Shown here in pieces: positions 1-20,623 of a stretch of DNA of 64,000 nucleotides; position 1 is the stretch's first letter, and each line of letters begins with the position of its first letter. Made by a program: the position numbers and the translations under genes. Below the pieces are notes generated by a model. The model saw only the letters and a list, made by a program, of their open reading frames with translations. It ran no database searches and was not told the DNA's origin. Source of the DNA: Macrostomum lignano (taxonomy: Eukaryota). Location of the stretch: the NCBI GenBank assembly GCA_002269645.1, contig NIVC01000255.1:682001-746000 (forward strand), read 5' to 3'.

Positions 1-22
1 TTACGAGTACAATTTCACTCAC

Positions 23-3000
23 GAACTCCTTGGTAGGCCTGGTTGCCAGGCGAGGTGAAGCGAACTTGAACGTACTGATGCTTCACCGAGCTTTCCACGG
101 CCAGATCCGTGATGCGGCCCGGTGGCAGAGTCACTGGCGCTGAGGCCACATTTTCCACGCGAAACTTGCCAGCCGTAGACGTGCGACTTACGGGTGACGT
201 CATCGTGACGGTCACTCCGTAGTCACCCTGCGAGGTCATTTTCTCGGGCAGAACGAGAGCCACGTAAATGCCATCGTTGGCCGTTAGGTCGGCACCTTTT
301 TAAGGATTGCGCCAGTTTCAAACACTCATAGGGGAAGAAAACTCAAGCCCCTTCATCACCCTTCCTGGAACAGAAAAACTTCACTCACCGAGCCCGTCAT
401 CTTTGAGCTGGACAGTGAAAGGAGACCCACTTGACGGCGCCACCATGGCCTCCAGAATGGCGCCCGTCAAAGGCGCGCTGTTGTTGGTCACGTAGGCGTA
501 GATCTTCTGCACGCTGAACTGGTTCACCTGCGGAAAACTGGAGACTCGCAGCCAGGTGTCCAGCAGCACGGTGGAATTGGCGCTACCGGTTCCACCAATC
601 ACGATAAGGCTGCCAGATGATGTACTTCGAGCGCGACGAATCAGGAGCTGATAGGAGTGGTTTTGAAGACTGTTAGACATGTGACTGTTAGAGACGGGGA
701 CTGTTAGAGATGGGACTGTTAGAGATGGGACTGTTAGACAAGGGACTGTTAGACAAGGGACTGTTAGACACAGGACGTTAGACACGGGACTGTTAGACAT
801 GGGACTGTTAGACACGGGCACTGCTAGACACAGGACTGTTAGAGATGGGACTGTTAGACACGGGACTGTTAGAGATGGGACTGTTAGATACGGGACTGTT
901 AGACACTGGACTGTTAGACACGGGGCTGTTAGACACGGGACTGTTAGAGATGGGACTGTTAGATACGGGACTGTTAGACACGGGACTGTTAGACACGGGA
1001 CTGCTAGACACGGGACTGTTAGACACGGGACTGTTAGACACGGAGACTGGTAGACACGGTGACTGTTAGACACGGGACTGTTAGACACGGAGACTGTTAG
1101 ACACGGGACTGTTAAACACGGGACTGTTAGACACGGGGACTGTTAGACACGGGGACTGTTAGACACGGGGACTGTTAGACACGGAGACTGGTAGACACGG
1201 TGACTGTTAGACACGGGACTGTTAAACACGGGACTGTTAGACACGGGGACTGTTAGACACGGGACTGTTAGACACGGAGACTGGTAGACACGGGACTGTT
1301 AGACACGGGACTGTTAGACACGGAGACTGTTATACATGGGACTGTTAAACACGGGACTGTTAGACACGGGGACTGTTAGACACGGGGACTGTTAGACACG
1401 GAGACTGGTAGACACGGGACTGTTAGACACGGGACTGTTAGACACGGAGACTGTTAGACACGGGACTGTTAAACACGGGACTGTTAGACACGAGGACTGT
1501 TAGACACGGGACTGTTAGACACGGAGACTGCTAGACACGGGACTGTTAGACACGGGGACTGTTAGACACGGAGACTGTTAGACACGGGACTGTTAGACAC
1601 GGAGACTGTTAGACATGGGACTGTGTTAGACACCGGACACAGGCAGTTCTCACCAGTTCCTCGGCACTCCGTTTTCTTCTTCCACTAGTGCTGGCTCCTG
1701 TCAGCCACCAGTTCCAGGTCCCCGGCTGCTCATGTATTAAAATATAAAATCTTGAGAATTCTCATCTGAGCTTACGAAAAATTATGGTAATGAGAATTTA
1801 TAAGCTTCACTTACCACAACTTCATGCGGAGGGATCTTGATCACTATGGTGTTGACGGCTGTATCGATTTGGTACACACCGGGGTCGGGACTGAACCTGC
1901 CATAGACAGTCCCTGTAGGACTGGTAGCCGTGAAGTTCACCGTGGACAAAGTCGTACCTGGCAGGGAAATCATGAAGTACAGAATGTCCGTGTCCCCCAC
2001 TGACACGGAGCCGCTTGTGGTTGGCAATGTGATTGCGGACGTTTGAAGCTGCGAAAGTCGGAAGAAAAAATGTCTTTAGCATTCTGAGTCACTTATTCTA
2101 ACTCTTTGTCCTTTTGTGTCACCTAATGGAGGTCTTTGTCTTTTTGAGTCACCTAATGGAGGTCTTTGTCTTTTTGAGTCTCCTAATGGAGGTCTTTGTC
2201 TTTTTAAGTCGCCTAATGGAGGTCTTTGTCCTTTTGAGTCACCTAATGGAGGTCTTTGTCCTTCTGAGTCACCTAATGGAGGTCTTTGTCCTTTTGAGTC
2301 ACCTAATGGAGGTCTTTGTCTTTTTGAGTCACCTAATGGAGGTCTTTGTCCTTTTGAGTCACCTAATGGAGCTCTTTGTTCTTCTGAGTCACTAACTAGA
2401 GGCCGTTATCCTTCTGAGTCTCTCAAAACTCACCAGAACGGCATTCTCGCCGCCTCCAACGCTCCGCTTCACCAGATCTGCAAAGGAGACCTCCAGTTCA
2501 ACATTCGCGGAGTGTTCTCCGACACGAACGTACTGCGCCCGTTGGTCAGGTTAGCTAGACGGGCCATTCTCTCGTCAGCGTATCTGCTGATGCTGATGGT
2601 GTCAAATACAATGCTGGTCTTAGCAGCCTGTTCGATAGCAACAGTCAAGTTCGGGCCTGTGTTGTGCTCGCCGTCCGTGATCAGAACTACGAAACCAGTC
2701 TGCGACTTGGTGTACGGAGCGGTGGCACCGAGGATCTGCGTTTTGATGCGGAGTAGGTCGGGTGCGACTCTTCTGGTCAGTGTTGTCCTCAGGCACTTCA
2801 CGACATTCGCACTGCTGCAGTCCACAGGACTCCCTGCACTCCCTGCACTCCCTGCACTCCCTACATTCCCTACACCCTGCACTCCCTACACTCCCTGTAC
2901 TCCCTACACTCCCTGCACTCCCTACACTCCCTGAACTCCCTACACTCCCTGTACTCCCTACACTCCCTGCACTCCCTGCACTCCCTACATTCCTTACACT

Positions 3001-6000
3001 CCCTACACTCCCTGTACTCCCTGCACTCCCTACATTCCCTACACTCCCTGCACTCCCTACACTCCCTACACTCCCTACACTCCCTGCACTCCCTGCACTC
3101 CCTGTACTCCCTGCACTCCCTGCACTCCCTGCACTCTTTTCAATACTTGCATTCCCTACATTCTAAACTACCAAAACTTGTACATTGTGGGAATCCAGCA
3201 TCATTTGACCCAATTTGAACCATAGAGAACTTATCCCGACAAAAAATTTTGGTCTTACAGACATCGCCTCGTAGATGGCTCCAGAAATATTTGTCGATCC
3301 TCCCGCCGCCAAGCTTTGAATTTTCTTGGCCAGCTGCTCTCTCACTGAGTCATCCGAGACCTTCAGCAGCGTTTGCAGTTCCCGAGCTGTTGCGCTGAAG
3401 CTCACAATTGAAAGTCGGGCACCGGTTTCCAAGAAGTATTTCACATAGATGGTTGCCGAGCGAATCTCGTTCTTTATTCGATCCTGAAATGGGACAGAAA
3501 TGAAGCTTTGTTGCATTGCATTGTTTTGCAGAATTTTACCAAATGCTGGTCATTGCAGAATGGTGTCATTACAAATGCTGGTCATTGGAGATGGTTCATG
3601 TCAATTTGGGTCATGGGAGATGGGTCATTCGCATTTTGTGTCATTCGCATTTTGTGTCATTCGCATTTTGTGTCATTCGCAATTTGGGTCATTCGCAATG
3701 TGTGTCATAGGATATTGGTCATTTACAATGTGGGTCATGAAAGATGAGTCATTGGCAATATGGGTCATGGGAGATGGATCATTGGCAATATGGGTCATAA
3801 GAGATGGGTCATTGGCAATATGGGTCATGGGAGATGGGTCATTGGCAATATGGGTCATGGGAGATGGGTTATTCGCAGTGTGGACCATTTTAAAAAATCG
3901 GTCACTATAGTCATGATGAGTCATATGGGTCATATGGATTCTCAAGGTCACATAGCAGCCAAGGTAAATGTCGGTTATACTTGTACTTTGCCGAAGCAAG
4001 CTCACCATATGATTCATGCTGCCAGACACGTCCAGCACCAGCACGACATCCCTGAATGCGCTCTTTTCCACAAGTAGCACCGTTGGCTGGGTTTCTTGCA
4101 CCGATGCACCAGGTGTGGTTGGCAGAAAATGCGGATGCTTTCGAAGTACTTCACCAGCTGACAGACCGCCGCAGGCTCTGTTGAATGGATTCGGCACTTG
4201 GCTGCTGTGGTGAACTCTCGTGTCGTTGTTGAACGACTTGCTGTCGCAGAACAGACTGACCGGCTGGCTCAGTATGCTGCCCCAATTGTTTCCCGTTGGG
4301 CTGGGTTTCGTGGTGAACTCGCAGATCTCCTGCATTTTAGCCAGCGAAAAGTTCTCAAAGCGTACCAGCTCGCTGAGACAGATGCTGCTGCTGTCTGCAC
4401 CGCTGGAGATGCTGTTGCGCAACCTGTACTGCCCTGGCGTGTTCGAGCTGCAGACGGAGGGCTGGAAAGTGCCGCTACCATCCTGATAGAACTGCACTCC
4501 GCTGACCGACTCTGACAGCAGGCCCCACAGGTAGATGGACAGCTCGCGGAGAAAACTATTGGCAGTTGCTGGAATTAAATCAATAGATGAATCAAGGAAA
4601 GTAAACAGCATTGCTTTCTCTGCTTTTGAGAAAGGGACGGGGGTTGGAGACAGGGACAGACAGGGAGAGGTTGGAGACAGGGACAGACAGACAGGGAGAG
4701 GTTGGAGACAGGGACAGACAGACAGGGAGAGGTTGGAGACACGGACAGACAGACAGGGACAGGTTGGAGACATGGACAGACAGTCAGGGAGAGGTTGGAG
4801 ACATGGGCAGACAGACAGGGAGAGGTTGGAGACATGGACAGACAGACGGGAGAGGTTGGAGACATGGACAGACAGACAGGGACAGGTTGGAGACAAGGAT
4901 AGACAGACAGGGACAGGTTGGAGACGGGGACAGACAGACAGGGAGAGGTTGGAGACAGGGACAGACAGACAGGGACAGGTTGGAGACAAGGATAGACAGA
5001 CAGGGACAGGTTGGAGACAGGGACAGACAGACAGGGAGAGGTCAGAGACAGGGACGGACAGACAGGGAGAGGTCGGGGACAGGGACAGACAGACAGGGGG
5101 AGGTTGGAGACAGGGACAGGGAGACAGGGAGAGGTCGGGGACACGGACAGGCATGTCGGGGACAGGGACAGACAGACAGGCAGAGAGAGGTTGGAGACGG
5201 GGACAGACAGTCAGACAGACAGACAGGGACAGGTTGGAGACAGGGATAGACAGACAGGGAGAGGTTGGAGACAGGGACAGACAGACAGGGAGAGGTTGGA
5301 GACAGGGACAGACAGACAGGGAGAGGTTGGAGACATGGACAGACAGACAGGGAGAGGTTGGAGACATGGGCAGACAGTCAGGGAGAGGTTGGAGACATGG
5401 GCAGACAGTCAGGGAGAGGTTGGAGACATGGGCAGACAGACAGGGAGAGGTTGGAGACATGGGCAGACAGACAGGGAGAGGTTGGAGACAGGGACAGACA
5501 GTCAGGGAGAGGTTGGAGACATGGACAGACAGTCAGGGAGAGGTTGGAGACAGGGACAGACAGACAGGGAGAGGTTGGAGACAGGGACAGACAGGGAGAG
5601 GTCGGGGACAGGGACAGACAGACAGGGAGAGGTTGGAGACAGTGACAGAAAGGGAGAGGTTAGAGACAGGGACAGACAGACAGGGAGAGGTTGGAGACAT
5701 GGGCAGACATACAGGGAGAGGTTGGAGACAGGGACAGACAGGGAGAGGTTGGAGACAGGGACAGACAGACAGGGAGAGGTTGGAGACAGGGACAGACAGG
5801 GAGAGGTTAGAGACAGGGACAGACAGACAGGGAGAGGTTGGAGACAGGGACAGACAGTCAGGGAGAGGTTGGAGACGGGGACAGACAGACAGGGAGAGGT
5901 TGGAGACGGGGACAGACAGACAGGGAGAGGTTGGAGACATGGGCAGACAGTCAGGGAGAGGTTGGAGACATGGGCAGACAGACAGGGAGAGGTTGGAGAC

Positions 6001-8316
6001 GGGGACAGACAGTCAGGGAGAGGTTGGAGACATGGACAGACAGTCAGGGAGAGGTTGGAGACAGGGACAGACAGACAGGGAGAGGTTGGAGACAGGGACA
6101 GACAGGGAGAGGTTGGAGACAGGGCCAGACAGACAGGGAGAGGTTGGAGACAGGGACAGACAGGGAGAGGTTGGAGACAGGGACAGACAGACAGGGAGAG
6201 GTTGGAGACAGGGACAGACAGACAGGGGGAGGTTGGAGACATGGGCAGACATACAGGGAGAGGTTGGAGACAGGGACAGACAGGGAGAGGTTGGAGACAG
6301 GGACAGACAGACAGGGAGAGGTTGGAGACAGGGACAGACAGGGAGAGGTTAGAGACAGGGACAGACAGACAGGGAGAGGTTGGAGACAGGGACAGACAGT
6401 CAGGGAGAGGTTGGAGACGGGGACAGACAGACAGGGAGAGGTTGGAGACAGGGACAGACAGACAGGGGGAGGTTGGAGACAGGGACAGGGAGACAGGGAG
6501 AGGTTGGGGACACGGACAGGCATGTCGGGGACAGGGACAGACAGACAGGCAGAGAGAGGTTGGAGACGGGGACAGACAGACAGGGAGAGGTTGGAGACAT
6601 GGGCAGACAGTCAGGGAGAGGTTGGAGACATGGGCAGACAGACAGGGAGAGGTTGGAGACGGGGACAGACAGACAGGGAGAGGTTGGAGACAGGGACAGA
6701 CAGACAGGGACAGGTTGGAGACAAGGATAGACAGACAGGGACAGGTTGGAGACAGGGACAGACAGACAGGGAGAGGTCAGAGACAGGGACGGACAGACAG
6801 GGAGAGGTCGGGGACAGGGACAGACAGACAGGGGGAGGTTGGAGACAGGGACAGACAGACAGGGGGAGGTTGGAGACAGGGACAGGGAGACAGGGAGAGG
6901 TTGGGGACACGGACAGGCATGTCGGGGACAGGGACAGACAGACAGGCAGAGAGAGGTTGGAGACGGGGACAGACAGTCAGACAGACAGACAGGGACAGGT
7001 TGGAGACAGTCAGACAGACAGACAGGGACAGGTAGGAGACGGGGACAGACAGTCAGACAGACAGACAGGGACAGGTTGGAGACGGGGACAGACAGTCAGA
7101 CAGACAGACAGGGACAGGTTGGAGACGGGGACAGACAGTCAGACAGACAAACAGGGACAGGTTGGAGACGGGGACAGACAGTCAGACAGACAGGGACAGG
7201 TTGGAGACGGGGACAGACAGTCAGACAGACAGGGACAGGTTGGAGAGGGCTCAGGCCCAGTTCGCCTACCCTTCAGCTCTCATATGGAAGCGAGACGCGA
7301 ACTTGTCACTCACCGTTCCTCCGAACCGTGTATTCGGGCATTTTAATCCATTTGTTTGGCCCGTAGCACTCATCGGCCGGGATGGTCTTCACTTTTCCAC
7401 CAGGATTCTCCAGCACGACATCGGCGGAGACCTCGGATTCCCAGGTGGCGGGCATGGACGGGAAGACGCCAGCATTCTTTAGCTCAGCGATTTTACTTGG
7501 CGGAACCAGCAGGCGGACAGTATTAATGGAAATGCGCCGCCCAACAGCCTCGGTTGCTCGGGCCATCTGGTGCGAAACATAGGCTAGATAGCCCTGCGGA
7601 TGGAAGGGGTGAGGTTGGAGGTGAGATGGGGTAAGAGTGGAGGTGACTTGGGGTGAGAGTGGAGGTGAGATGGGGTGAGAGTGGAGGTGAGATGGGGTGA
7701 GAGTGGAGGTGAGATTGGGTGAGAGTGGAGGAGAGATTGGGTGAGAGTGTAGGAGAGATGGGATGAGAGTGGAGGAGAGATGGGGTGATAGTGGATGTGA
7801 GATTAGGTGAGAATGGAGGTGAGATTGGGTGAGAGTGGAGGAGAGATGGGGTGAGAGTGGATGTGAGATTAGGTGAGAGTGGAGGTGAGATTGGGTGAGA
7901 GTGAAGTAGAGATGGGGTGAGAGTAGAGAAGAGATGGGGTGAGAGTGGAGGAGAGATGGGGTGAGAGTGGAGGTGAGATTGGGTGAGAGTAGAGAAGAGA
8001 TGGGGTGAGAGTGCAGGAGAGATGCGGTGAGAGTGGAGGTGAGATGGGGACCGGGGTGAGAGTGGAGGTGAGATGGGATGAGAGTCTGTATGTGGCAGTT
8101 ACCATAGAAAATACGATAACAAATATTTTTTATTCTGAAAATAGCCTGACTCACTTTAAGCGCCTTCATGTTATCAACCGAGGCAAAGTTTTCGTTCTGA
8201 ACTAAAATCAGAATGTTATCAAGCCTGTAATCGGTATTGAGTCGAATATTTGTGGCTGAACAGTGAGAGAACAGCCCCAGAATCAGGAGCCAGCTGACAA
8301 CGTTAATTGCAGCCAT
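23..8316 (-). CDS. CLCA: CLCA-family (calcium-activated chloride channel regulator-like) secreted protein, 9 exons visible, continues off the left edge
   Basis: Exons (minus): 8316-8155, 7593-7314, 4568-4006, 3483-3259, 2735-2434, 2048-1815, 1725-1654, 647-389, 295-23. All junctions are GT-AG and phases join, except for one missing nt in exon 5 near 2505-2515. The protein has a signal peptide (MAAINVVSWLLILGLFSHCSA), a Cys-rich segment (FCDSK...PNPFNRAC), a vWA domain (VLVLDVSGSM...GGSTNI...LITDGE), LKDDGLGADLTANDGIY and an FnIII start (PPGRITDL), in CLCA domain order. Confidence 0.9.
665..1625. repeat. 15/16-bp minisatellite (GGGACTGTTAGACAC) in a CLCA intron
   Basis: Direct reading; fills intron 648-1653. 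Confidence 0.95.
2105..2395. repeat. 30-bp minisatellite (GAGTCACCTAATGGAGGTCTTTGTCYTTTT-like) in a CLCA intron
   Basis: About 9-10 copies; source of ORFs 2114 and 2116. Confidence 0.95.
2828..3135. repeat. 9-bp minisatellite (CTCCCTRCA) in a CLCA intron
   Basis: Direct reading. Confidence 0.95.
3600..3870. repeat. Degenerate GGTCATT-core repeat (up to 30-bp unit) in a CLCA intron
   Basis: GGGTCATTGGCAATATGGGTCATGGGAGAT copies. Confidence 0.85.
4640..7247. repeat. About 31-bp purine-rich minisatellite (GGGAGAGGTTGGAGACAGGGACAGACAGACA) filling CLCA intron 2
   Basis: 2.6-kb array; explains all the GRGWRQGQTD / SPCLSVPV ORFs. Confidence 0.97.
7605..8085. repeat. About 22-bp minisatellite (GGGTGAGAGTGGAGGTGAGATG) in CLCA intron 1
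   Basis: Direct reading. Confidence 0.93.
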
Positions 8317-8857
8317 GAAAACACGGGCCCTGCAGTGAATTAGGGTTCTCAAATTTGCCAAGCCAGGCTCCTATAGATCCAATGTGTTTAGGTTAAGTAG
8401 ATGAATAATTTTTCTGGCATCAAGGATAGCTATAAAATAAATCTAAATATAGTAGCGCAGGGTGAGTCATATTGCTGCCTTGTAAAAAGGGACTTCAGTG
8501 TGCCCCATTACGATTCAGGATTTTAATTAATATTAGCGATATTCAAAATATATACTTTATTATACTCGTAAGTGCAGAAGCACTTGTACAGAAAACGGGC
8601 CAAACTGAATGCATACGAGTATTGTCTATTCAACTCAGGACAAAAAGACAGCGAGTAAGGGGCTGCGGAGTTGAGCTTGGCTGAGAGTCTGTCAGACACA
8701 AGGATGCCAGATGCAGTGTGATAGCGGGTAGCCCAGACAGTTTTATAGAAATATGCAGTGCGGTGGGGGGGGGGGGGCTTGGCGTGGCTGGCAGGCAGAT
8801 CTTGCAACCGAAATATAAGTTCATTTTTAGCTAATAAACGTAAGGACGGGAGACGGT

Positions 8858-8944
<87 letters not shown>

Positions 8945-9678
8945 GAGAGGGAGAGAAGGGAGAGGGAGAGAAGGGAGAGGAAGAGAAGGGAGAGGGAAGA
9001 GGTGAGAGGGAGAGAAGGGAGAGGGAGAGAAGGGAGAGGGAGAGAAGGGAGAGGGAGAGAAGGGAGAGGGAGAGAAGGGAGAGGGAGAGAAGGGAGAGGG
9101 AGAGAAGGGAGAGGGAGAGAAGGGAGAGGGAGAGAAGGGAGAGGGAGGAGGTGAGAGGGAGAGACTGGAGAGGAGAGAAGGGAGAGGGAGGAGGTGAGAG
9201 GGAGAGAAGGGAGAGGGAAGAGGTGAGAGGGAGAGAAGTGAGAGGGAGAGAAGGGAGAGGAGAGAAGGGAGAGGGAGGAGGTGAGAGGGAGAGACTGGAG
9301 AGGAGAGAAGGGAGAGGGAGGAGGTGAGAGGGAGAGAAGGGAGAGGGAGAGAAGGGAGAGGGAGGAGGTGAGAGGGAGAGACTGGAGAGGAGAGAAGGGA
9401 GAGGGAGGAGGTGAGAGGGAGAGAAGGGAGAGCGAGAGAAGGGAGAGGGAGGAGGTGAGAGGGAGAGAAGGGAGAGCGAGAGAAGGGAGAGGGAGGAGGT
9501 GAGAGGGAGAGACTGGAGAGGAGAGAAGAGAGAGGGAGGAGGTGATAGGGAGAGAAGGGAGAGGGAGAGACGGGAGAGGAGAGAAGGGAGAGGGAGGAGG
9601 TGAGAGGGAGAGAAGGGAGAGGGAGAGACGGGAGAGGAGAGAAGGGAGAGGGAGGAGGTGAGAGGGAGAGAAGGGAGA
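8858..9678. repeat. (GA)n microsatellite grading into a 15-bp polypurine minisatellite
   Basis: (GA)n to about 8940, then GGGAGAGAAGGGAGA units; almost purely purine on the plus strand. Confidence 0.97.
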
Positions 9679-10089
9679 GTTGTTACGGCAGAAGCGAGAA
9701 TTCTTAACTAATGGCAACTGGCAGCATATTTAGCTTCAGCCATAAAGGACATTGCGGTCTGCCATTGGTGAACCTACGAGTACTATCAGACAGGCACAGA
9801 TAAGTCAAGAAAACAGACGGGTTCAACCCCGAAAAAAATTAGACCGGAAGCCATAGCCAATTAGGAAGACTTTAAGCTGCGTACCCGTTGCTAAATCCCT
9901 TGGCCCGTAGTGCGAAATTGCGCACGAAAGATCATAAAATGTATCTTAAACCGAAAGGCTGTAAAGAAGCTATAAGTGAAGTGAACCGCCCAAATGTTTT
10001 TATGGCGCTGGGCCAATGTGATATACCAATCAATATGATCAGCTCAGTTGATGAAAAATGTCGATTTGAAAATTTGCTAATTTCACTGA

Positions 10090-10405
10090 CATTACCGTCA
10101 AGGTCACTGATTTCAGCCTCAAGGTCAGTGATTTGAGGGTCAAGGGGACTGATTTTTGGGTCAATATCACTCATTTGAGGGTAAATGTCACTGATTTGAG
10201 GGTCAATGTCAACTGATTTGAGGGTCAATATCACTGATTTGAGGGTAAATGTCACTGATTTGAGGGTAAATATCACTGATTTGAGGGTCAATGTCAACTG
10301 ATTTGAGGGTCAATGTCGCTGATTTGAGGGTCAAGGTCACTTCTTTCAGCCCCAAGGTCACTGATTTAAGTGTTAAGGTCACAGATTTCAGCCTCAAGGT
10401 CACTG
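10090..10405. repeat. 21-bp minisatellite (TCACTGATTTGAGGGTCAATG)
   Basis: Direct reading. Confidence 0.9.
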
Positions 10406-10703
10406 ATGAGAGACTTATGTCAGTGACTTGAGCGCTGCTTTGATCACTGTCTGAACAGACTGAATTAAATTAAATTCACACTCAGACAAGAACTCTTTTG
10501 CCTCTTTGCTAGCTGAAAATTCTTACGAAGTTTCTGCACCGTGGCAACCAATGGCAGTGAACTTAGCTGCTCCATCTGTTCCCAGCTTCCTTCGAGAGCA
10601 TAAGATCACTTCCCCCCACCCATGGTAACCGCAGCTGAAGCAGAGAGGCTGAAAATCTTCAAGTTTTTTATCAACAGAAAATTGAGTTGAACAGCAGTTC
10701 AGA

Positions 10704-13700
10704 ATGGCTCTTCAAGCACTCGACAACTTCTTGTTGAAGAAAAGCCTGCTTTTAATCTTTGCTGCTTCTTCAAGTCTGCTTCTGGTTTCTGGCACTGTAG
10801 CTACTCAAGTCTCAGGTAGGGTTGAGTGAGCTTGATTTGATTAACTTTCTTAGTTGTTTTGTTGGGGCACTGGAGAGCCAAAAGTTAGTTAAAGTGAAGG
10901 TAATTTGATTCGGTGTTACGTGTACTTCGTGGGAAAACTCTTTTTTAGGATGTCACAGCAATGACATTTTGAGCAGTTTCCTAGGGACTAAATTGACCAC
11001 TTTTAATTTTGAATAGTTTCTAATTGCGTTTTGAAAGATTTTTTAACATCAGAAAGTCTCACAAACTACAGAAACTCCCACAAACTAAACAGAAACTCTC
11101 ACAAACTAAAAAGAAACTCTCACAAACTAAACAGAAACTCTCACAAACTAAACAGAAACTCTCACAAACTAAACAGAAACTCTCACAAACTAAACAGAAA
11201 CTCTCACAAACTAAACAGAAAATCTCACAAACTAAACAGAAACTCTCACAAACTAGACAGAAACTCTCATAAACTAGACAGAAACTCTCATAAACTAGAC
11301 AGAAACTCTCACAAACTAAACAGAAACACTCACAAACTAAACAGAAACTCCCACAAACTAGACAGAAACTCCCACAAACTAGACAGAAACTCTCACAAAC
11401 TACACAGAAACTCTCACAAACTAAACAGAAACTCTCACAAACTAAACAGAAACTCTCACAAACTACAAAAAACTCTCACAACCTAAACAGAAACTCTCAC
11501 AAACTACAAAAACTCTCACAAACTACAAAAACTCTCACAAACTACAGAAACTCTCACAAACTACAAAAACTCTCACAAACTACAAAAACTCTCACAAACT
11601 ACAGAAACTCTCACATGCTACAAAAACTCTCACAAACTACAAAAACTCTCACAAACTACAGAAACTCTCACAAACTACAAAAACTCTCACAAACTACAGA
11701 AACTCTCACAAACTACAAAAACTCTCACAACCTAAACAGAAACTCTCACAAACTACAAAAACTCTCACAAACTACAAAAAACTCTCACAACCTAAACAGA
11801 AACTCTCACAAACTACAAAAACTCTCACAAACTACAAAAACTCTCACAAACTACAGAAACTCTCACAAACTACAAAAACTCTCACAAACTACAAAAACTC
11901 TCACAAACTACAGAAACTCTCACATGCTACAAAAACTCTCACAAACTACAAAAACTCTCACAAACTACAGAAACTCTCACAAACTACAAAAACTCTCACA
12001 AACTACAGAAACTCTCACAAACTACAAAAACTCTCACAACCTAAACAGAAACTCTCACAAACTACAAAAACTCTCACAAACTACAGAAACTATCACAAGC
12101 TACAAAAACTCTCACAAACTACAAAAACTCTCACAAACTACAGAAACTCTCACAAACTACAAAAACTCTCACAAACTACAGAAACTCTCACAAGCTACAA
12201 AAACTCTCACAAACTACAAAAACTCTCACAAACTACAGAAACTCTCACAAACTACAAAAACTACTACTGAGCAGTGGAGCTCAGAGCCTGCAAACTGTAA
12301 CCCAACTAGCAAAACCTGTTAAGCCGTAAAACTCAGGAAAGTTTTAAATAATCCTTCACCAGGGTTTGATGCATTTTCAACTCAACAGCATCAATTTATC
12401 ATCGAATCTGAGCAGGAGTTTCCTAGAAAGCTCCCTTAATCCGTCTCAGTGTGCATTGAGCTGGAGCTTGGATCATGAGGATTAACTGAAAACTCTACGA
12501 TTCGAAGAAAAACTTCTCAAAGATTCCCAACTAGAAAAATTCAACAAATACCTCAACAGTCTGCTGTCAGTAGTAAAAAAAGAATAATAACGACGATTTT
12601 ATTACTCGTAGTTAATTGTAAAAAATCGAAATAAAGAATTTCTCTGACAGCGAAAATTAATTATAATGCTGCTGAATTAAAGCAGAAAAACACCTGCATA
12701 AAAAAGTGTTTTTTGTCAAAAAAGAAAAACATATTTTGATGCTCGCGTGCACCCAGTAGGCAGCAAGCAGATGATCAGGAGAGGCCTAAAAGCTCACCAC
12801 AGTCTGAATAACGAAGTTATCCCAGTCAATATAGATCAGAGGTAGAGCAAAGGGCCGCTGAGGCGTGTTACAAAGCGAGGCGACGTGGCGTTTTGAGTTT
12901 TTGCTTCGAGCTGCTCCACAAATTCGACCAGGCAAGGCGGGAGGAAGACTGAGAATAGAGAGACAAGCTGCGAGCTGAGTCTCTCTCTTCCCCATGGTCT
13001 GTTGACAAATAAACTGACGAATTGCGAGTGGCGAATCTCTACTAAAAAGGCCATACCGTCGCTTGTGGATTCCCTTAGCTACACGCCTCTCGAACAAGGG
13101 ACATCACAGACATGCACGGCAGACCAACTGGACTCTTGACTCTTTGTTCCATCATAGTCTTTGTAGCCAGCAGATGCAGCGAATGCTCTGCGTTCAATCA
13201 GTCCACTTGGACTGACGAACAAAGACTTCTGCATCGAATATTGTCCTCGTACGATCCGGCATCCAGGCCGACAATTCATGCTGGCAAAACTGTTGAAGTT
13301 CGATTCCAGATAGCCATGGTGCAGATCTCTCAGCTGGTGAGTTTGGTTTATCCTCCCTGATTCCCCATCTATCACCACCCCAGCAGGAGCGCTCGAACCC
13401 AGGCCTGGTCGGGTTAAACCGGACGAACAGAGACTGATGGAGGCGATGATGCAGCGTTACGACGCCTCCGTTCGTCCGGTGATCAACGCGTCCGATCAGG
13501 TCACGGTGACGTTCGGCTTCGCACTGATCCTCATCACGGATATGGTTTGCCATACCTGCAGTCATTTATCAAGATTTTTATACCTTAATTATCTAACTTG
13601 AAAGCAACTGAAAGCTTCTGAATAATATTATCCATTATTGTTTTCTTTCTGTTTCAGGACGAGGTCAACCAGGTTCTAACGACAAACGTTTGGCTTGAAC

Positions 13701-16700
13701 AGGTTGGCTTGAAATGTACTTTTAGAAATGAGCGATCCGTCATAGCACTGACTTAAAGTCCTTGAAGACATTCTGATAATCACATATCACATATCGCGGT
13801 GTATCTTAAGAAAATTGCAGTATAATAGAGACACTAAAAGCGATTTATCTTAGAAATAAGTTTGAGACCACTGTGTGCATAGCAGAGTGTGTTAAACTGG
13901 GTAGCAACAGTCTATGGCCAGCCCTGCTGACCAACCCAAAAGCTGGGCAGCGATAGTCTATGGCCAGCCCTGCTGACCAACCCAAAAGCTGGGCAGCGAT
14001 AGTCTATGGCCAGCCCTGCTGACCAACCCAAAAGCTGGGCAGCGATAGTCTATGGCCAGCCCTGCTGACCAGCCCAAAACTGGGCAGCGATAGTCTATGG
14101 CCAGCCCTGCTGACCAACCCAGACTGCAAGCTTAAAAATCCACAGATTATTTTTTCGACCTCCCTAGCAACACTGCTGCTGTCATCTTAGCAGTAATATA
14201 TGGTTGGTCAGAGGGGGACTAAGACGATTTTATCATGGTTTGGTGACCATAAGATAAATTATAAATATTTAATAAAACATCTTGCACTTTCCAACTATAG
14301 GCGGCAAAAAAGGCATTGACAGATAAAAAGAAGAAAAGTTTTATCCTTAAAGAGAAGCATGATTGCTTTCTATAACTTCTCTCGCAGAATTCGATTCTGC
14401 AACTCAATTTTCTAGAGAGAATGAAATGTATAAACATGTACTTTTTGTCTATGCAGAACCTAATGATTGCTAATGTGCATAGGCTTAGGGAATTTCGTGT
14501 TCCTATTAGGGGAGCAGCTGGGATGCGAGACTGCCCGATCTGCTCTGTCGCTGTTCGAGTTTAGCGAGTGCTTCACCGCCGCCGCCACTTCACTTGAGAA
14601 TCCAGCTGCCTAAAAGAGATGAAGGAGCGGCTTTTGAAGGGATTGAGTCGTGACTTACAAACAGTTCGAAAGTTCGATCTTCGAATCTTTAAAGTTTGGA
14701 AACTTGAAAACTGAATGAAACTTAAGGTTGATTTTTTTACCTTGGATTCATGAAGTCATAAAATCGATTGTTAGGATTCAAATTAGATGTGTCAGTAGCG
14801 CTTAAGTAGATGTGTCAGTAGTGCTTAAGTAGATGTGTCAGTAGTGCTTAAGTAGATGTGTCAGTAGTGCTTAAGTAGATGTGTCAGTAGTGCTTAATTA
14901 GATGTGTCAGTAGTGCTTAATTAGATGTGTCAGTAGTGCTTAAGTAGATGTGTCAGTAGTGCTTAAGTAGATGTGTCAGTAGTGCTTAAGTAGATGTGTC
15001 AGTAGTGCTTAAGTAGATGTGTCAGTAGTGCTTAAGTAGATGTGTCAGTAGTGCTTAATTAGATGTGTCAGTAGTGCTTAATTAGATGTGTCAGTAGTGC
15101 TTAAGTAGATGTGTCAGTAGTGCTTAAGTAGATGTGTCAGTAGTGCTTAAGTAGATGTGTCAGTAGTGCTTAAGTAGATGTGTCAGTAGTGCTTAAGTAG
15201 ATGTGTCAGTAGTGCTTAAGTAGATGTGTCAGTAGTGCTTAATTAGATGTGTCAGTAGTGCTTAATTAGATGTGTCAGTAGTGCTTAAGTAGATGTGTCA
15301 GTAGTGCTTAATTAGATGTGTCAGTAGCGCTTAAGTAGATGTGTCAGTAGTGCTTAAGTAGATGTGTCAGTAGTGCTTAAGTAGATGTGTCAGTAGTGCT
15401 TAATTAGATGTGTCAGTAGTGCTTAATTAGATGTGTCAGTAGTGCTTAATTAGATGTGTCAGTAGTGCTTAATTAGATGTGTCAGCAGTGCTTAAGTAGA
15501 TGTGTCAGTATGTGTCCGTCAAAACACAGAATTGAATTTTACTGTATGTCCTGACATATCCTAAGAATCAATTACTGATTATCACAAATTAAACATAGAG
15601 ACCTGTCCACCTGTCAATCAAAACAGGAGTGGCACGACGAGCGGCTGCACTGGGACCCGAAGGACTACAACGGTTTGGAGGTGCTGCGAGTGCCATGTCA
15701 GAAAATCTGGCTGCCTGACATTGTGCTGTACAACAGGTGACATAGTGATTCTACAGACACTGACACACTGATTCTACAGGCACTGACATACTGATTCTAC
15801 TGACACTGACACACTGATTCTACAGACACTGACACACTGATTCTACAGGCACTGACACACTGATTCTACAGACACTGACACACTGATTCTACAGACACTG
15901 ACACACTGATTCTACAGACACTGACACACTGATTCTACAGACACTGACACACTGATTCTACTGACACTGACACACTGATTCTACAGACACTGACACACTG
16001 ATTCTACAGACACTGACACACTGATTCTACAGGCACTGACACACTGATTCTACAGACACTGACACACTGATTCTACAGACACTGACACACTGATTCTACA
16101 GACACTGACACACTGATTCTACTGACACTGACACACTGATTCTACAGACACTGACACACTGATTCTACAGACACTGACACACTGATTCTACAGGCACTGA
16201 CACACTGATTCTACAGACACTGACACACTGATTCTACAGACACTGACACACTGATTCTACAGGCACTGACACACTGATTCTACAGACACTGACACACTGA
16301 TTCTACAGACACTGACACACTGATTCTACAGACACTGACACACTGATTCTACAGACACTGACACACTGATTCTACAGACACTGACACACTGATTCTACTG
16401 ACACTGACACACTGATTCTACAGACACTGACACACTGATTCTACAGACACTGACACACTGATTCTACAGGCACTGACACACTGATTCTACAGACACTGAC
16501 ACACTGATTCTACAGACACTGACACACTGATTCTACAGACACTGACACACTGATTCTACTGACACTGACACACTGATTCTACAGGCACTGACACACTGAT
16601 TCTACAGACACTGACACACTGATTCTACAGTCACTGACACATCAAAGTCAACCGTGACCCCCCCCTACACCTGACGCAGTGCTGATGACTTCACCACAGG

Positions 16701-18646
16701 CTACATGCAGAGCAAGGCGATGGTGGACGCGAACGGCACCGTGTTTTGGCCCCACCCGCCAAGCTGCGATCCACCTGCAAGATCGACATCACGTATTTCC
16801 CGTTTGACGATCAGATTTGCACCATGAAGTTCGGCTCGTGGACCTACGATGGTTATCAAGTGAACATCACCAAGAAGTTGGTTAGATCTTCTGTTCAACC
16901 ATCGAGAAATTTTTATTTAAATCACGTGACATCTTGACAACACTTTCAGGCGCGAGGAAGTGGACTTTCAAATTATGTTCAAAGCGGAGAGTGGAATCTG
17001 ATTCGAATCGATGTGGAACGGCAGGAGGTGAGATCAGTGACCTGGATTTGGAACCTAAGGAAATTGATGTGGAACCTTAAGAAGTAGATATGGAACCTTG
17101 GGAAGTAGATATGGAACTGATGGAAATAGACATGGAACTGATGGAAATAGACATGGAACTGATGGAAATAGATATGGAACTGATGGAAACAGATATGGAG
17201 CTGATGGAAATAAACATGGAACTGATGGAAATAGATATGGAACTGATGGAAATAGACATGGAACTGATGGAAATAGACATGGAACTGATGGAAATAGACA
17301 TGGAACTGATGGAAAAAGACATGGAACTGATGGAAATAGACATGGAACTGATGGAAATGGACTTGGAACTGATGGAAATAGACACGGAACTGATGGAAAT
17401 AGACATGGAACTGATGGAAATAGACACGGAACTGATGGAAATAGATATGGAACTGGAGTGAAATACTGCAATAAATCTATTCGAAACACCAGGGTACTTC
17501 GTTAGGAGTCTTACATGTTAGCAAGTATTGACGCGTATCTCGTAATTTTATTTAGTTTGACTAAACAAGGCCAACAAAAGGTATAAGTTTACAGAGCCTA
17601 GTAAACTTATTAACGCCGAGTACCCAGGGAATGGCAGTGGGCAGTCCAGCGGCCGCCCAAGTCTCTTTAATCAAATTTCTGCCTGGGAAGGCTGCTGCTG
17701 CAGCGGCCGAGCTCTCAATATTTGTGAAGTAGAATTTTGTCTGGACCGCTCCAGATGGTGTCGAGTGAGAGCAGAGCAGATCATGAACTTGATAGGAGCC
17801 TTGGAGCCTTGAGCAAAAGGTTCAATAAGTCTGCTTTGAGTTCTGTTACTGCATTGCAAAGTTGTTCAGCTCGGATGCTTGTTGATCTAGTCTAATTTCC
17901 GGTCTGCTAAGGATCTATTCTCATCGATCGGGGGCTAATCTCAGCTGTATCAGACAAATCTAATCTCAGCGAAATCTAATCTGAGCTGTCTCAGGCAAAA
18001 TCTAATCTCAGCTGTCTCAGACTAAATCTAATTTCAGCTGTATCAGGCTAAATCTAGTCTCAGCTAAATCTAATGTCAGCTGTCTCAGGCTAAATCTAAT
18101 CTCAGCTGTCTCACCTAAATCTAATTTAAGCTGTCTCACCTAAATCTAATCTCAGCTGTCTCAGGCTAAATCTAATCTCAGCTGTCTCAGGCTAAATCTA
18201 ATCTCAGCTGTCTCAGGCTAAATCTAATCTCAGCTGTCTCAGGCTAAATCTAATCTCAGCTGTCTCAGGCTAAATCTAATCTCAGCTGTCTCAGGCTAAA
18301 TCTAATCTCAGCTGTCTCAGGCTAAATCTAATATCAGCTAAATCTAATCTCAGCTAAATCTAATCTCAGCTGTCTCAGGCTAAATCTAATCTCAGCTGTC
18401 TCAGGCTAAAATCTATGAATCTCAGCTAAATCTAATCTCAGCTGTCTCAGGCTAAATCTAATCTCAGGTGTCTCAGTTAAATCTAACCCAAATGTCACCA
18501 GCCAATAAATAAAAAGCTCTACCTCTCCAAAACCATTCCAGACCGTCTACCCCATCAGCCGGTGCCCTACCCGGACATCAAGTTCCACATAGTGATCCGC
18601 AGGCGCACCCTGTATACTGTTCAACATCATCTTCCCTGCCTGTGGC
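10704..18646 (+). CDS. Nicotinic acetylcholine receptor subunit (Cys-loop channel), extracellular domain, isoform using distal exon 1a; truncated by assembly gap
   Basis: Exons 10704-10815 (signal-like), 13387-13544 ([14 protein letters not shown]), 13658-13702 (45 nt, [15 protein letters not shown]), 15627-15736 (110 nt, [16 protein letters not shown]), 16680 to about 16877 (Cys loop [22 protein letters not shown]), 16950-17027 (SNYVQSGEW), 18542-18646 ([16 protein letters not shown]). No TM1-TM4 exons are visible. 1-nt deletions at about 16750 and near the gap edge. Confidence 0.9.
11050..12262. repeat. 19/21-bp minisatellite (AAACTCTCACAAACTA[AA]CAG) in nAChR intron 1a
   Basis: 21-bp variant on the left and 19-bp variant on the right. 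Confidence 0.95.
13112..13336 (+). CDS. Alternative first coding exon (1b) of the nAChR gene: signal peptide plus alpha1 helix and beta1 strand
   Basis: ATG at 13112 opens [27 protein letters not shown]...[21 protein letters not shown]...[11 protein letters not shown]. It ends at a GTGAGT donor in phase 0, in frame with the common exon at 13658. Confidence 0.8.
13909..14121. repeat. 46-bp tandem repeat in an nAChR intron
   Basis: AGTCTATGGCCAGCCCTGCTGACCAACCCAAAAGCTGGGCAGCGAT, about 4.5 copies. Confidence 0.92.
14784..15510. repeat. 23-bp minisatellite (TAGATGTGTCAGTAGTGCTTAAG)
   Basis: About 31 near-perfect copies. Confidence 0.97.
15742..16640. repeat. 23-bp minisatellite (CTGACACACTGATTCTACAGACA) filling an nAChR intron
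   Basis: Starts a few bases after the donor at 15737 and ends about 40 bp before the acceptor at 16679. Confidence 0.97.
17085..17455. repeat. 21-bp minisatellite (ATGGAACTGATGGAAATAGAC)
   Basis: Source of the MELMEID ORFs. Confidence 0.95.
17935..18485. repeat. 26-bp minisatellite (CTAAATCTAATCTCAGCTGTCTCAGG)
   Basis: Direct reading. Confidence 0.93.
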
Positions 18647-19450
18647 NNNNNNNNNNNNNNNNNNNNNNNNNNNNNNNNNNNNNNNNNNNNNNNNNNNNNN
18701 NNNNNNNNNNNNNNNNNNNNNNNNNNNNNNNNNNNNNNNNNNNNNNNNNNNNNNNNNNNNNNNNNNNNNNNNNNNNNNNNNNNNNNNNNNNNNNNNNNNN
18801 NNNNNNNNNNNNNNNNNNNNNNNNNNNNNNNNNNNNNNNNNNNNNNNNNNNNNNNNNNNNNNNNNNNNNNNNNNNNNNNNNNNNNNNNNNNNNNNNNNNN
18901 NNNNNNNNNNNNNNNNNNNNNNNNNNNNNNNNNNNNNNNNNNNNNNNNNNNNNNNNNNNNNNNNNNNNNNNNNNNNNNNNNNNNNNNNNNNNNNNNNNNN
19001 NNNNNNNNNNNNNNNNNNNNNNNNNNNNNNNNNNNNNNNNNNNNNNNNNNNNNNNNNNNNNNNNNNNNNNNNNNNNNNNNNNNNNNNNNNNNNNNNNNNN
19101 NNNNNNNNNNNNNNNNNNNNNNNNNNNNNNNNNNNNNNNNNNNNNNNNNNNNNNNNNNNNNNNNNNNNNNNNNNNNNNNNNNNNNNNNNNNNNNNNNNNN
19201 NNNNNNNNNNNNNNNNNNNNNNNNNNNNNNNNNNNNNNNNNNNNNNNNNNNNNNNNNNNNNNNNNNNNNNNNNNNNNNNNNNNNNNNNNNNNNNNNNNNN
19301 NNNNNNNNNNNNNNNNNNNNNNNNNNNNNNNNNNNNNNNNNNNNNNNNNNNNNNNNNNNNNNNNNNNNNNNNNNNNNNNNNNNNNNNNNNNNNNNNNNNN
19401 NNNNNNNNNNNNNNNNNNNNNNNNNNNNNNNNNNNNNNNNNNNNNNNNNA
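18647..19450. other. Assembly gap (804 N)
   Basis: Run of N. ORFs in the supplied track that cross it are artefacts. Confidence 1.
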
Positions 19451-19974
19451 AGAGACGATCTGTTTTGGGTGAGTATTATCTGCTGTAGAAGTATTGTACA
19501 CCAGAGTACTTGTGTTACTTGGTAGAGCACAATTCAAAAGCAATGCAACAATCTCAGTGGCATTGTTGGGACAAAGCTACAAACGCAATGAATAGTAAAC
19601 ACAGCCCAGCCTAGCTCAAGGCTAGTAATTTGTTGGGCATTTATTGGGACATTGCAGCCAGGCCTATTTTTTGAACAGCATTTGTTGGGTCGCACTTATT
19701 GGGACAATACTGATTCTAATCGCGACTACTTCTGAGTTCTGACTTTTCAAAACAGACCCAGCATTAGTTGAACACGTTCTATTAAAGGGTTCCTTTATAG
19801 CCTATTAATGATTACTAAAGCAAGCCTATCTTAATTGATTTTTTCCTCGCAGATTCTGAAGTCAGCCACGCCAGCGACATGCCTAAGAGACAAGAATGCG
19901 CTTTAACGATCAGCAGCGAGCATTCTGATCTCGCCGCTGCATCCGTCATTTTTCACTTGCTGCTGCAGCAGCAG

Positions 19975-20016
<42 letters not shown>

Positions 20017-20623
20017 GCTATCCGTGCAGGCAGTCAGTCTATTTGTGAATTTTCTGGTGGATCTGAAGAAAACCCGTCCGGCACAGGATTAAAGAGAAAG
20101 AGACGATCTGTTTTGGGTGAGTATTATCTGCTGTAGAAGTATTGTACACCAGAGTACTTGTGTTACTTGGTAGAGCACAATTCAAAAGCAATGCAACAAT
20201 CTCAGTGGCATTGTTGGGACACAAGCTACAAACGCAATGAATAGTAAACACAGCCCAGCCTAGCTCAAGGCTAGTAATTTGTTGGGCATTTATTGGGACA
20301 TTGCAGCCAGGCCTATTTTTGAACAGCATTTGTTGGGTCGCACTTATTGGGACAATACTGATTCTAATCGCGACTACTTCTGAGTTCTGACTTTTCAAAA
20401 CAGACCCAGCATTAGTTGAACACGTTCTATTAAAGGGTTCCTTTATAGCCTATTAATGATTACTAAAGCAAGCCTATCTTAATTGATTTCTTTTCCTCGC
20501 AGATTCTGAAGTCAGCCACGCCAGCGACATGCCTAAGAGACAAGAATGCGCTTTAACGATCAGCAGCGAGCATTCTGATCTCGCCGCTGCATCCGTCATT
20601 TGGTTCACTTGCTGCTCACAAGC

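What the first reader, a model, noticed from the sequence alone, without database searches (positions are those of the whole stretch)
4500..4568. CLCA with its zinc-metalloprotease site erased (pseudo-enzyme)
Established: the CLCA N-terminal domain carries HExxH plus a downstream Asp (vertebrate consensus FVHEWAHLRWGVFDEY) and self-cleaves the protein. Seen: the ungapped equivalent here is FLRELSIYLWGLLSES. Both His and the Asp are replaced (R, I, S) while E and WG remain. The rest of the gene is in frame apart from one probable assembly indel, and the vWA MIDAS DxSxS is intact. Inference: a catalytically dead CLCA.
Basis: partly seen in the sequence, partly recalled or inferred. Interest (0 to 1): 0.7.

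Follow-up and report, generated by a model that had tools for sequence, protein, structure and literature searches.

The report
Flatworm CLCA-like protein without catalytic zinc site
The window holds one copy of a flatworm (Macrostomum lignano) CLCA-family gene whose protease zinc site has been replaced; this is real and looks old and conserved, but CLCAs with substituted catalytic sites were already described in 2013.

Summary
On the minus strand, window 4507-4554 encodes FLRELSIYLWGLLSES at the start of exon 3 of a spliced CLCA-like gene (9 GT-AG exons in the window). The gene is Macrostomum lignano Mlig010915g3.

Against the CLCA1 motif HExxHxxxGxxDEY, all three zinc ligands are replaced (H to R, H to I, D to S). 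The nearby Tyr (to S) and the Met-turn Met (to L) are replaced too, and about 45 residues that carry the autocleavage/inhibitory loop are missing inside one exon. Kept are the catalytic Glu, the four second-zinc residues, conserved cysteines and a complete VWA MIDAS.

- Two other genomic copies (98-99% identical) have the same motif, and dN/dS among the three copies is 0.2-0.4.
- Four deep M. lignano paralogue groups (25-40% identity), including a tandem neighbour, also lack the ligands, so the loss is old and the proteins are maintained.
- The window copy has a 1-nt deletion (CCC to CC, 2509-2510). It is either an assembly error or a recent disablement of a redundant copy.

Lenart et al. 2013 already reported frequent substituted sites in CLCA_N, with H1 to R a common case. 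Verdict: supported by sequence evidence only, a new member of a known kind, low to moderate interest.

The parts
8155..8316 (-). Exon 1: ATG and signal peptide (MAAINVVSWLLILGLFSHCSA|TNIRL...), 54 codons, donor gtgagt
   Evidence: Identical to the start of P0001, P0019 and P0020.
7314..7593 (-). Exon 2: N-terminal half of the metallohydrolase-like (MH) domain. It ends in phase 1 (AAC G|gtgagt).
4006..4568 (-). Exon 3: active-site helix equivalent, Cys-rich C-terminal MH subdomain, and start of the VWA domain
4507..4554 (-). FLRELSIYLWGLLSES, the equivalent of FVHEWAHLRWGVFDEY. Changes: His1 to Arg155 (4546-4548), Glu156 kept, His2 to Ile159 (4534-4536), Gly163 kept, Asp to Ser166 (4513-4515), Glu167 kept, Tyr to Ser168.
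   Evidence: Ligand identities come from the cryo-EM preprint.
4270..4272 (-). Leu247 in the Met-turn column (GSILSQ against SIMFAQ)
4207..4452 (-). Span that holds the retained second-zinc residues: Cys187 (4450-4452), Cys255 (4246-4248) and His268 (4207-4209). The fourth residue, Glu167, lies at 4510-4512.
   Evidence: These columns are invariant or nearly invariant in alignment A3. Human equivalents are E168, C187, C250 and H255. Residues checked.
4018..4032 (-). MIDAS DVSGS (D327, S329, S331)
3259..3483 (-). Exon 4: VWA domain, contains MIDAS Thr398 (GGSTNI)
2434..2735 (-). Exon 5: VWA domain with MIDAS Asp430 (LITDGE). It is 302 nt long where the other two copies have 303 nt.
2509..2510 (-). 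Site of the 1-nt deletion (CC here, CCC in copies g1 and g2). It creates the frameshift and the annotated 497-aa truncation.
1815..2048 (-). Exon 6: beta-sheet-rich domain
1654..1725 (-). Exon 7: contains RRKR|S (window 1669-1680), a furin-type consensus in a loop predicted to be disordered. The tandem paralogue has RRKR|T at the aligned position.
389..647 (-). Exon 8: beta-sheet-rich domain. The acceptor was chosen for phase compatibility and matches P0001.
23..295 (-). Exon 9: DGIY ... SRTSTAGKF ... PPGRITDL lie in one exon with only 46 residues between DGIY and PPGR, against a median of about 89. The autocleavage/inhibitory loop is missing here (junction near 195-200). The gene continues beyond the left edge of the window.
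   Evidence: The last exon is at L003 18817-19256.

Best explanation
This is one of three near-identical genomic copies of Mlig010915, a Macrostomum lignano gene. It encodes a type I membrane-anchored CLCA-family protein: signal peptide, metallohydrolase-like domain, VWA domain, beta-sheet-rich domain, FnIII-like domain and a C-terminal transmembrane helix. Its metallohydrolase domain is a pseudo-protease.

**Lost:** the catalytic zinc site (H, H, D to R, I, S), the flanking Tyr, the Met-turn Met, and the loop that in CLCA1 both blocks the active site and carries the self-cleavage site.

**Kept:** the predicted fold, the second (structural) zinc site, conserved disulfide cysteines, and a complete VWA MIDAS.

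**Shown:** the substitutions, their presence in all copies and paralogues, and purifying selection.

**Inferred:** the protein cannot cleave itself or any substrate by the zincin mechanism. It most likely acts as a non-catalytic cell-surface binding or regulatory protein through its MIDAS, as the CLCA1 VWA domain does with TMEM16A, with the dead domain serving as a scaffold.

**Speculative:** maturation into two fragments, if it happens, is done in trans by a furin-type convertase at RRKR604-607. This site lies in a loop predicted to be disordered and is conserved in the 40%-identical tandem paralogue.

The 1-nt deletion in the window copy is either a homopolymer assembly error or a recent disablement of a redundant copy.
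For: - **Identity.** P0001, P0020 and P0019 are Mlig010915g1, g2 and g3. The window equals NIVC01000255.1.
- **Gene model.** Nine GT-AG exons with compatible phases.
- **Family.** HMMER E-values down to about 1e-56, with 60 hits at or below 1e-30, among them annotated CLCA regulators. The VWA domain is closest to human CLCA1 6pyo by sequence and by structure (TM 0.87).
- **Site loss.**, read against the cryo-EM residue assignments.
- **Loop loss.** It lies inside one exon and is shared with P0021, P0022 and P0023.
- **Selection.** dN/dS is 0.21-0.37; the deficit of non-synonymous changes has p = 6e-5 for g1 versus g2.
- **Deep paralogues lacking the ligands.** P0021 has LFFSQ..S, P0031/P0044 have LYFSQ..S, and the tandem Mlig021454 has RLFAQ..P.
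- **Structure.** AlphaFold2 gives pLDDT 82.9 for the full length and 87.6 for the MH domain. The active-site helix is modelled, and residues 601-640 around RRKR have low confidence. The best fold matches of the MH model are metzincins: ADAM10, ADAMTS4, MMPs and snapalysin.
- **Expression.** The GenBank annotation was derived from an RNA-seq-guided transcriptome (PMC5730564).
Against: - No biochemical data exist for this protein or for any close relative.
- The catalytic Glu156 and Glu167 are retained, so an unconventional activity cannot be formally excluded.
- The Pfam CLCA model scores below its gathering cut-off.
- The fold matches of the MH model are weak: the best E-value is 9e-3 and none is at or below 1e-3.
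- The dN/dS values rest on only 19-29 substitutions between copies that may undergo gene conversion.
- I found no copy-specific expression data.
- The MIDAS partner and the furin processing are inference only.
- I could not establish whether M. lignano also has a CLCA with an intact HExxH.
Confidence: 0.8

Rival explanations
1. The copy in the window (g3) is a true pseudogene. Under this reading the frameshift is real and the locus is decaying, so the dead site here is only part of a non-functional redundant copy in the partly duplicated DV1 genome.
For: - There is a 1-nt deletion relative to both other copies, and the locus is annotated as a 497-aa truncated product.
- The DV1 line carries duplicated chromosomes, and the assembly holds 180 Mb of blocks that are at least 95% identical, so redundancy is expected.
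Against: - All downstream exons of g3, including the last one outside the window, remain open and are 99-100% identical to g1 and g2.
- The lesion is a CCC to CC homopolymer change in a PacBio/Canu assembly that was polished in a multi-copy region.
- Even if the frameshift is real, it does not explain the motif, which is shared by the intact g1 and g2 and by deep paralogues.
Confidence: 0.3
2. The domain is still a hydrolase that uses a non-canonical site. The retained Glu156 and Glu167, together with other residues or the second metal site, would provide catalysis.
For: - Glu156 is retained in this gene and in P0022.
- Glu167 and the second-zinc residues are invariant.
Against: - All three ligands of the catalytic zinc are gone, as are the Met-turn Met and the flanking Tyr.
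- The paralogues have also lost the Glu (LFFSQ, LYFSQ, RLFAQ), so it is not conserved across the clade.
- The natural intramolecular substrate loop is deleted.
- The cited papers describe no zincin that works without its His ligands.
Confidence: 0.05
3. The result is an artefact of alignment or gene model: the real HExxH lies in a missed or alternative exon, or the motif is misaligned.
For: The Pfam match to the CLCA model is weak.
Against: - No HExxH occurs in any frame of window 1-9000, and none occurs in P0001, P0019 or P0020.
- Intron 2 is minisatellite.
- The motif is flanked by conserved columns in three independent MAFFT alignments.
- The transcript-derived annotation gives the same exon junction.
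Confidence: 0.02

Closest known systems
Vertebrate CLCA1/CLCA2/CLCA4 (the CLCAsin metzincins; human CLCA1 cryo-EM preprint 10.1101/2025.10.18.683246)
   Same: - Same domain order: signal peptide, MH domain with a Cys-rich C-terminal subdomain, VWA with a full MIDAS, beta-sheet-rich domain and FnIII-like domain.
- A C-terminal transmembrane anchor, as in CLCA2 and CLCA4.
- The second-zinc residues (E, C, C, H) and the disulfide cysteines equivalent to C125-C267 are conserved.
- The VWA domain superposes on 6pyo (TM 0.87).
   Different: - About 25% identity.
- Catalytic zinc ligands H, H, D are replaced by R, I, S; Tyr169 by S; the Met-turn Met by L.
- The inhibitory-domain loop with the self-cleavage site is absent.
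- The disulfide equivalent to C200-C205 is absent.
- An inserted disordered loop carries RRKR and RRAR.
CLCA_N proteins with substituted HExxH (Lenart, Dudkiewicz, Grynberg, Pawlowski 2013, PMC3650047)
   Same: This is the same phenomenon. That survey found only 72% of PF08434 members with HExxH, reported H1 to R as a frequent substitution in CLCA_N, and inferred at least five independent losses. In my sample of 128 representatives, 39 have at least one substituted position. Named examples are an oyster (Pinctada, HQ..R), another oyster (Saccostrea, HH..H) and a sea urchin (Lytechinus, RN..Y).
   Different: - The text of that paper does not mention flatworms.
- Here all three ligands are lost together with the Met-turn Met and the autocleavage loop.
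- The loss is shared by a whole group of deep paralogues.
Catalytically inactive ADAMs (for example those with LQxxL or HQxxH sites, which act in sperm-egg interaction)
   Same: They are membrane-anchored metzincin-fold ectodomains that lack the zinc site and are kept as binding or adhesion proteins. Lenart et al. cite them as the best-studied analogy.
   Different: They belong to a different metzincin family (M12). They bind through disintegrin and Cys-rich domains, not through a VWA MIDAS.

Membership tests
CLCA family (Pfam CLCA_N PF08434 + VWA; CLCAsin) | Match to Pfam PF08434 at or above the gathering score | tested here: not met
   The score is 20.7 bits against a cut-off of 25.6. The paralogues P0022 (112 bits), P0031 (53 bits) and P0021 (25.8 bits) pass.
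CLCA family (Pfam CLCA_N PF08434 + VWA; CLCAsin) | Collinear full-length homology to annotated CLCA proteins | tested here: met
   phmmer finds 60 proteins at E <= 1e-30. Hits include proteins annotated as calcium-activated chloride channel regulators from sea urchins, a nemertean, an oyster, a tick, a frog and a lizard, aligned over about 600-800 residues.
CLCA family (Pfam CLCA_N PF08434 + VWA; CLCAsin) | Domain order MH - VWA - beta-sheet-rich - FnIII-like, with a signal peptide | tested here: met
   Alignments. The AlphaFold2 full-length model has pTM 0.83. The VWA domain matches 6pyo.
CLCA family (Pfam CLCA_N PF08434 + VWA; CLCAsin) | Zinc-binding motif HExxHxxxGxxDEY | tested here: not met
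   The sequence is RELSIYLWGLLSES; only E, G and E are kept.
CLCA family (Pfam CLCA_N PF08434 + VWA; CLCAsin) | Met-turn methionine (human Met238) | tested here: not met
   Leu247 is in that column. The column is Met in 89 of 89 representatives with an intact motif.
CLCA family (Pfam CLCA_N PF08434 + VWA; CLCAsin) | Second zinc site (human E168, C187, C250, H255) | tested here: met
   E167, C187, C255 and H268 lie in invariant or nearly invariant columns. This is by alignment only; the metal was not measured.
CLCA family (Pfam CLCA_N PF08434 + VWA; CLCAsin) | VWA MIDAS (DxSxS + Thr + Asp) | tested here: met
   D327, S329, S331, T398 and D430 are present.
CLCA family (Pfam CLCA_N PF08434 + VWA; CLCAsin) | Inhibitory loop that carries the autocleavage site | tested here: not met
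   There are 46 residues between DGIY and PPGRITDL, against a median of 89. The alignment shows a gap where P0004 has ...RNRAHYLPGY.... Both flanks lie in one exon.
CLCA family (Pfam CLCA_N PF08434 + VWA; CLCAsin) | Zinc-dependent self-cleavage | not testable with these tools
   This needs protein expression and an assay.
Metzincin fold | Structural similarity of the MH domain to solved metzincins | tested here: inconclusive
   The MH model has pLDDT 87.6. Twelve of the top 13 Foldseek hits are metzincins (ADAM10, ADAMTS4, MMP-9/10, snapalysin, ecarin), but the best E-value is 9e-3 and the TM-scores are 0.2-0.4. No full-length CLCA1 structure is in the PDB copy.
CLCA_N proteins with substituted active sites (Lenart et al. 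2013) | CLCA_N homology together with a substitution at H1, E2 or H5 of HExxH | tested here: met
   H1 to R and H5 to I.

The most novel reading that the evidence does not exclude
Macrostomum, and perhaps flatworms more widely, carry a clade of CLCA pseudo-proteases. In this clade the catalytic zinc site and its intramolecular substrate (the inhibitory, self-cleavage loop) were lost together, while the structural zinc site and the MIDAS were kept. In the Mlig010915/Mlig021454 branch, self-processing would have been replaced by cleavage in trans at a newly acquired furin-type RRKR site in a disordered loop. That would be an evolutionary hand-over from autoproteolytic to convertase-dependent maturation.
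Probability: 0.25. Interest if true: 0.4.

Novelty: new member of a known kind. Interest (0 to 1): 0.25.

Why it matters
This gene gives a clean natural example of how a self-cleaving metzincin becomes a pseudo-enzyme. The catalytic metal site, the Met-turn and the loop the enzyme cleaves in itself disappear together. The structural zinc site and the VWA MIDAS stay under selection.

That pattern supports the view that the binding function of CLCAs through the VWA domain can stand alone, without proteolysis. M. lignano can be used for RNAi and transgenesis, so the role of a protease-independent CLCA could be tested in vivo. It does not open a new category, because substituted-site CLCAs have been published since 2013.

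Tried and rejected
- **Profile search with the four members lacking the ligands.** This used the word-indexed protein search. It returned no further clade members and did not even recover the input paralogues, so other flatworms could not be surveyed.
- **Origin of P0022.** P0022 is the closest relative outside M. lignano (motif YEFGQ, same loop deletion). It comes from an unnamed SRA transcript assembly, SRR30276804, and its organism could not be identified.
- **Fold search with the full-length model.** It was dominated by VWA proteins, so I modelled the MH domain alone.
- **Solved full-length CLCA1.** The PDB copy has none, so a direct structural comparison of the active site was not possible.
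- **Expression data.** I looked for Mlig010915 and Mlig021454 in paper texts and in two sets of supplements and found nothing.
- **Alternative exon with HExxH.** Searched for and rejected.
- **Small intron as an explanation of the exon 5 frame change.** Rejected. The only GT..AG candidate in the overlap, noticed by reading the exon 5 sequence, would be about 17 nt, and the other two copies simply have one more C.
- **Whether M. lignano has any CLCA with an intact HExxH.** Not determined.
Full report
**1. What is in the sequence**

The window is eukaryotic DNA rich in minisatellites. On the minus strand, 4554..4507 reads TTT CTC CGC GAG CTG TCC ATC TAC CTG TGG GGC CTG CTG TCA GAG TCG, which is FLRELSIYLWGLLSES. 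It lies at the start of an exon whose first base, 4568, follows a ttccag acceptor.

I built a gene model of nine exons in the window:

| Exon | Window coordinates (minus strand) |
|---|---|
| 1 | 8316-8155 |
| 2 | 7593-7314 |
| 3 | 4568-4006 |
| 4 | 3483-3259 |
| 5 | 2735-2434 |
| 6 | 2048-1815 |
| 7 | 1725-1654 |
| 8 | 647-389 |
| 9 | 295-23 |

All exons have GT-AG boundaries and compatible phases. The model starts with an ATG and a signal peptide and runs off the left edge of the window. Every intron is mostly a tandem array.

**2. Identity**

The spliced product is 98% identical to P0001, the hypothetical protein BOX15_Mlig010915g1 of the flatworm Macrostomum lignano (935 aa). Its 90% cluster holds three proteins, g1, g2 and g3.

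The window is the reverse of part of NIVC01000255.1 in assembly GCA_002269645.1 and carries g3. Locus L003 positions 1-18316 equal window 18316..1.

g3 is annotated as a 497-aa protein (P0019) that ends ...SENTPRMLNWRSPLQIW. The cause is a single missing base in exon 5: ACTCCGCG in the window against ACTCCCGCG in g1 and g2, at window 2509-2510. Downstream of it, all g3 exons stay open and are 99-100% identical to the other copies, including the last exon outside the window.

The assembly is PacBio/Canu, polished with Pilon and scaffolded with SSPACE. It comes from a line with duplicated chromosomes, and the gene models derive from RNA-seq-guided transcripts (PMC5730564). The frameshift is therefore either a homopolymer error or a very recent lesion in a redundant copy, and reads are needed to tell which. 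All three copies encode the same FLRELSIYLWGLLSES.

**3. Family**

- Pfam finds a strong VWA domain but only a sub-threshold CLCA_N match (20.7 bits against a cut-off of 25.6).
- The best solved relative by sequence is the human CLCA1 VWA domain, 6pyo.
- An exhaustive phmmer search of 1.84 billion representatives gave 60 hits at E <= 1e-30.
- The hits that I looked up include proteins annotated as calcium-activated chloride channel regulators from sea urchins, a nemertean and oysters.
- BLASTP alignments to such proteins are collinear over 600-900 residues.

So this is a divergent member of the CLCA family, at about 25% identity to canonical members.

**4. The active site**

The 2025 cryo-EM preprint of human CLCA1 assigns the following:

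- catalytic zinc ligands: His156, His160 and Asp167;
- Tyr169 next to the site, and Met238 as the Met-turn;
- motif HEXXHXXXGXXDEY;
- a second, structural zinc held by the motif Glu with Cys187, Cys250 and His255;

In alignments with up to 154 relatives, the flatworm protein compares as follows:

| Human CLCA1 feature | Flatworm residue | State |
|---|---|---|
| His156 (Zn ligand) | Arg155 | replaced |
| Glu157 (general base) | Glu156 | kept |
| His160 (Zn ligand) | Ile159 | replaced |
| Gly164 | Gly163 | kept |
| Asp167 (Zn ligand) | Ser166 | replaced |
| Glu168 (second Zn) | Glu167 | kept |
| Tyr169 | Ser168 | replaced |
| Met238 (Met-turn) | Leu247 | replaced |
| Cys187, Cys250, His255 (second Zn) | Cys187, Cys255, His268 | kept |
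| Cys125-Cys267 (disulfide) | Cys130, Cys280 | kept |
| MIDAS DxSxS + Thr + Asp | D327, S329, S331, T398, D430 | complete |

The Met-turn column is Met in 89 of 89 representatives with an intact motif and is non-Met in 11 of 36 substituted ones (Fisher p = 3e-7).

The stretch between DGIY and PPGRITDL is 46 residues, against a median of about 89. The alignment gap covers exactly the region where a frog CLCA1-like protein has ...RNRAHYLPGY.... Both flanks lie in exon 9, so this is not a missed exon.

No HExxH exists in any frame of window 1-9000.

**5. Is it a decaying gene or a maintained protein?**

*Recent copies.* Among the three copies, dN/dS is 0.21-0.37. This holds in the MH domain alone (0.24-0.30). 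The deficit of non-synonymous changes is significant (p = 6e-5, 5e-4 and 0.03), although the counts are small.

*Deep paralogues.* The closest relatives in the whole library are M. lignano paralogues at 25-40% identity. They are each other's best BLAST hits.

| Protein | Source | Motif positions H-E-x-x-H | Asp position |
|---|---|---|---|
| Mlig010915 (this gene) | M. lignano | RELSI | S |
| Mlig021454 (partial protein P0023), tandem neighbour | M. lignano; about 3.7 kb beyond the left window edge, present next to all three copies | RLFAQ | P |
| P0021 | M. lignano | LFFSQ | S |
| P0031 / P0044 | M. lignano | LYFSQ | S |
| P0022 | transcript from SRR30276804, organism unknown | YEFGQ | P |

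P0021, P0022 and P0023 also lack the cleavage-loop segment. The zinc site was therefore most likely lost before these paralogues diverged, and the proteins have been kept since.

**6. Structure prediction**

- AlphaFold2 with a 104-sequence alignment gives a confident full-length model (pLDDT 82.9, pTM 0.83). A helix at 147-162 carries R155, E156 and I159.
- Confidence is low at residues 601-640. This insertion relative to canonical CLCAs contains RRKR604-607|S and RRAR|S.
- The tandem paralogue, about 40% identical, has RRKR|T at the aligned place. This suggests, but does not show, processing by a proprotein convertase.
- The VWA part superposes on 6pyo (TM 0.87, rmsd 2.4-2.8).
- No full-length CLCA1 structure is in the PDB copy.

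**7. Comparison with what is known**

Lenart et al. [quoted passage not shown] It reports:

- HExxH in only 72% of PF08434 members;
- H1 to R and H5 to K as frequent substitutions in CLCA_N;
- at least five independent losses;
- a decoy or accessory role proposed by analogy with inactive ADAMs.

In my sample, 39 of 128 representatives have at least one substituted position. Nine of these are only D to N. Named cases include Pinctada (HQ..R), Saccostrea (HH..H) and Lytechinus (RN..Y). The sample is biased towards relatives of a query that itself lacks the ligands.

The present gene is thus a new member of a described kind. What seems not to be in the cited papers:

- the flatworm clade;
- the joint loss of the Met-turn and the self-cleavage loop;
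- the retention of the structural zinc site;
- the conserved RRKR site.

**8. Verdict**

The most likely mode of action is a membrane-anchored, MIDAS-dependent binding or regulatory protein with an inert metzincin scaffold. This is an inference from CLCA1 VWA biology, and my confidence in that specific mechanism is about 0.4. My confidence that it is not a zincin protease is about 0.85.

Novelty is low to moderate.

Noticed in passing
window 19588-30240 (next to the N gap at 18647-19449): A satellite with a period of about 647 bp, about 17 copies, most of them near-identical. It explains the flat base composition from 20 to 30 kb.
   Followed up: partly
window 668-1638, 2103-2420, 2829-3136, 4655-7246, 7606-8085: Every intron of the CLCA-like gene consists mostly of minisatellite arrays with units of 15, 30, 9, 31/43 and 22 nt. 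Intron lengths differ greatly between the three genomic copies; for example, intron 3 is 11.7 kb in g1 and about 0.5 kb in g2 and g3.
   Followed up: partly
L003 21996-25161, about 3.7 kb beyond the left edge of the window; also L001 32492-37394 and L002 19829-22950: A tandem CLCA-like paralogue, Mlig021454 (partial protein P0023), lies on the same strand directly downstream in all three copies. It is about 35-40% identical, also lacks the zinc ligands (RLFAQ...PE), and shares the RRKR site.
   Followed up: yes
window ~53377-58710, minus strand: Exons of a bestrophin homologue (Pfam Bestrophin, E = 7e-12 and 2e-13). Bestrophins are calcium-activated chloride channels, and this one lies about 50 kb from the CLCA-like gene. 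The proximity may well be coincidence.
   Followed up: partly
window 40269-44171, plus strand: A nuclear receptor gene: a C4 zinc-finger DNA-binding domain (Pfam zf-C4, E = 2e-9), plus ORFs that may encode its ligand-binding domain (not checked), interrupted by repeat-rich introns.
   Followed up: partly
window ~13100-17000, plus strand: Exons of a Cys-loop (nicotinic-type) receptor subunit (Pfam Neur_chan_LBD, E = 4e-16), with 23-nt minisatellites in its introns.
   Followed up: partly
window 4006-4011: A copy-specific in-frame difference just after the MIDAS: CATATG in the window copy (SMNHM) against GGG in g1 and g2 (SMSG, SMNG). The deposited g3 protein reads SMNH-DRIK, one residue shorter than the canonical GT-AG splice predicts.
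   Followed up: partly
P0005, P0006 and P0077 (metagenome-derived eukaryotic CLCA-like proteins): These have HEWAK or HEFAK, with the second His replaced by Lys. This is the H5 to K pattern that Lenart et al. reported as frequent in CLCA_N.
   Followed up: no
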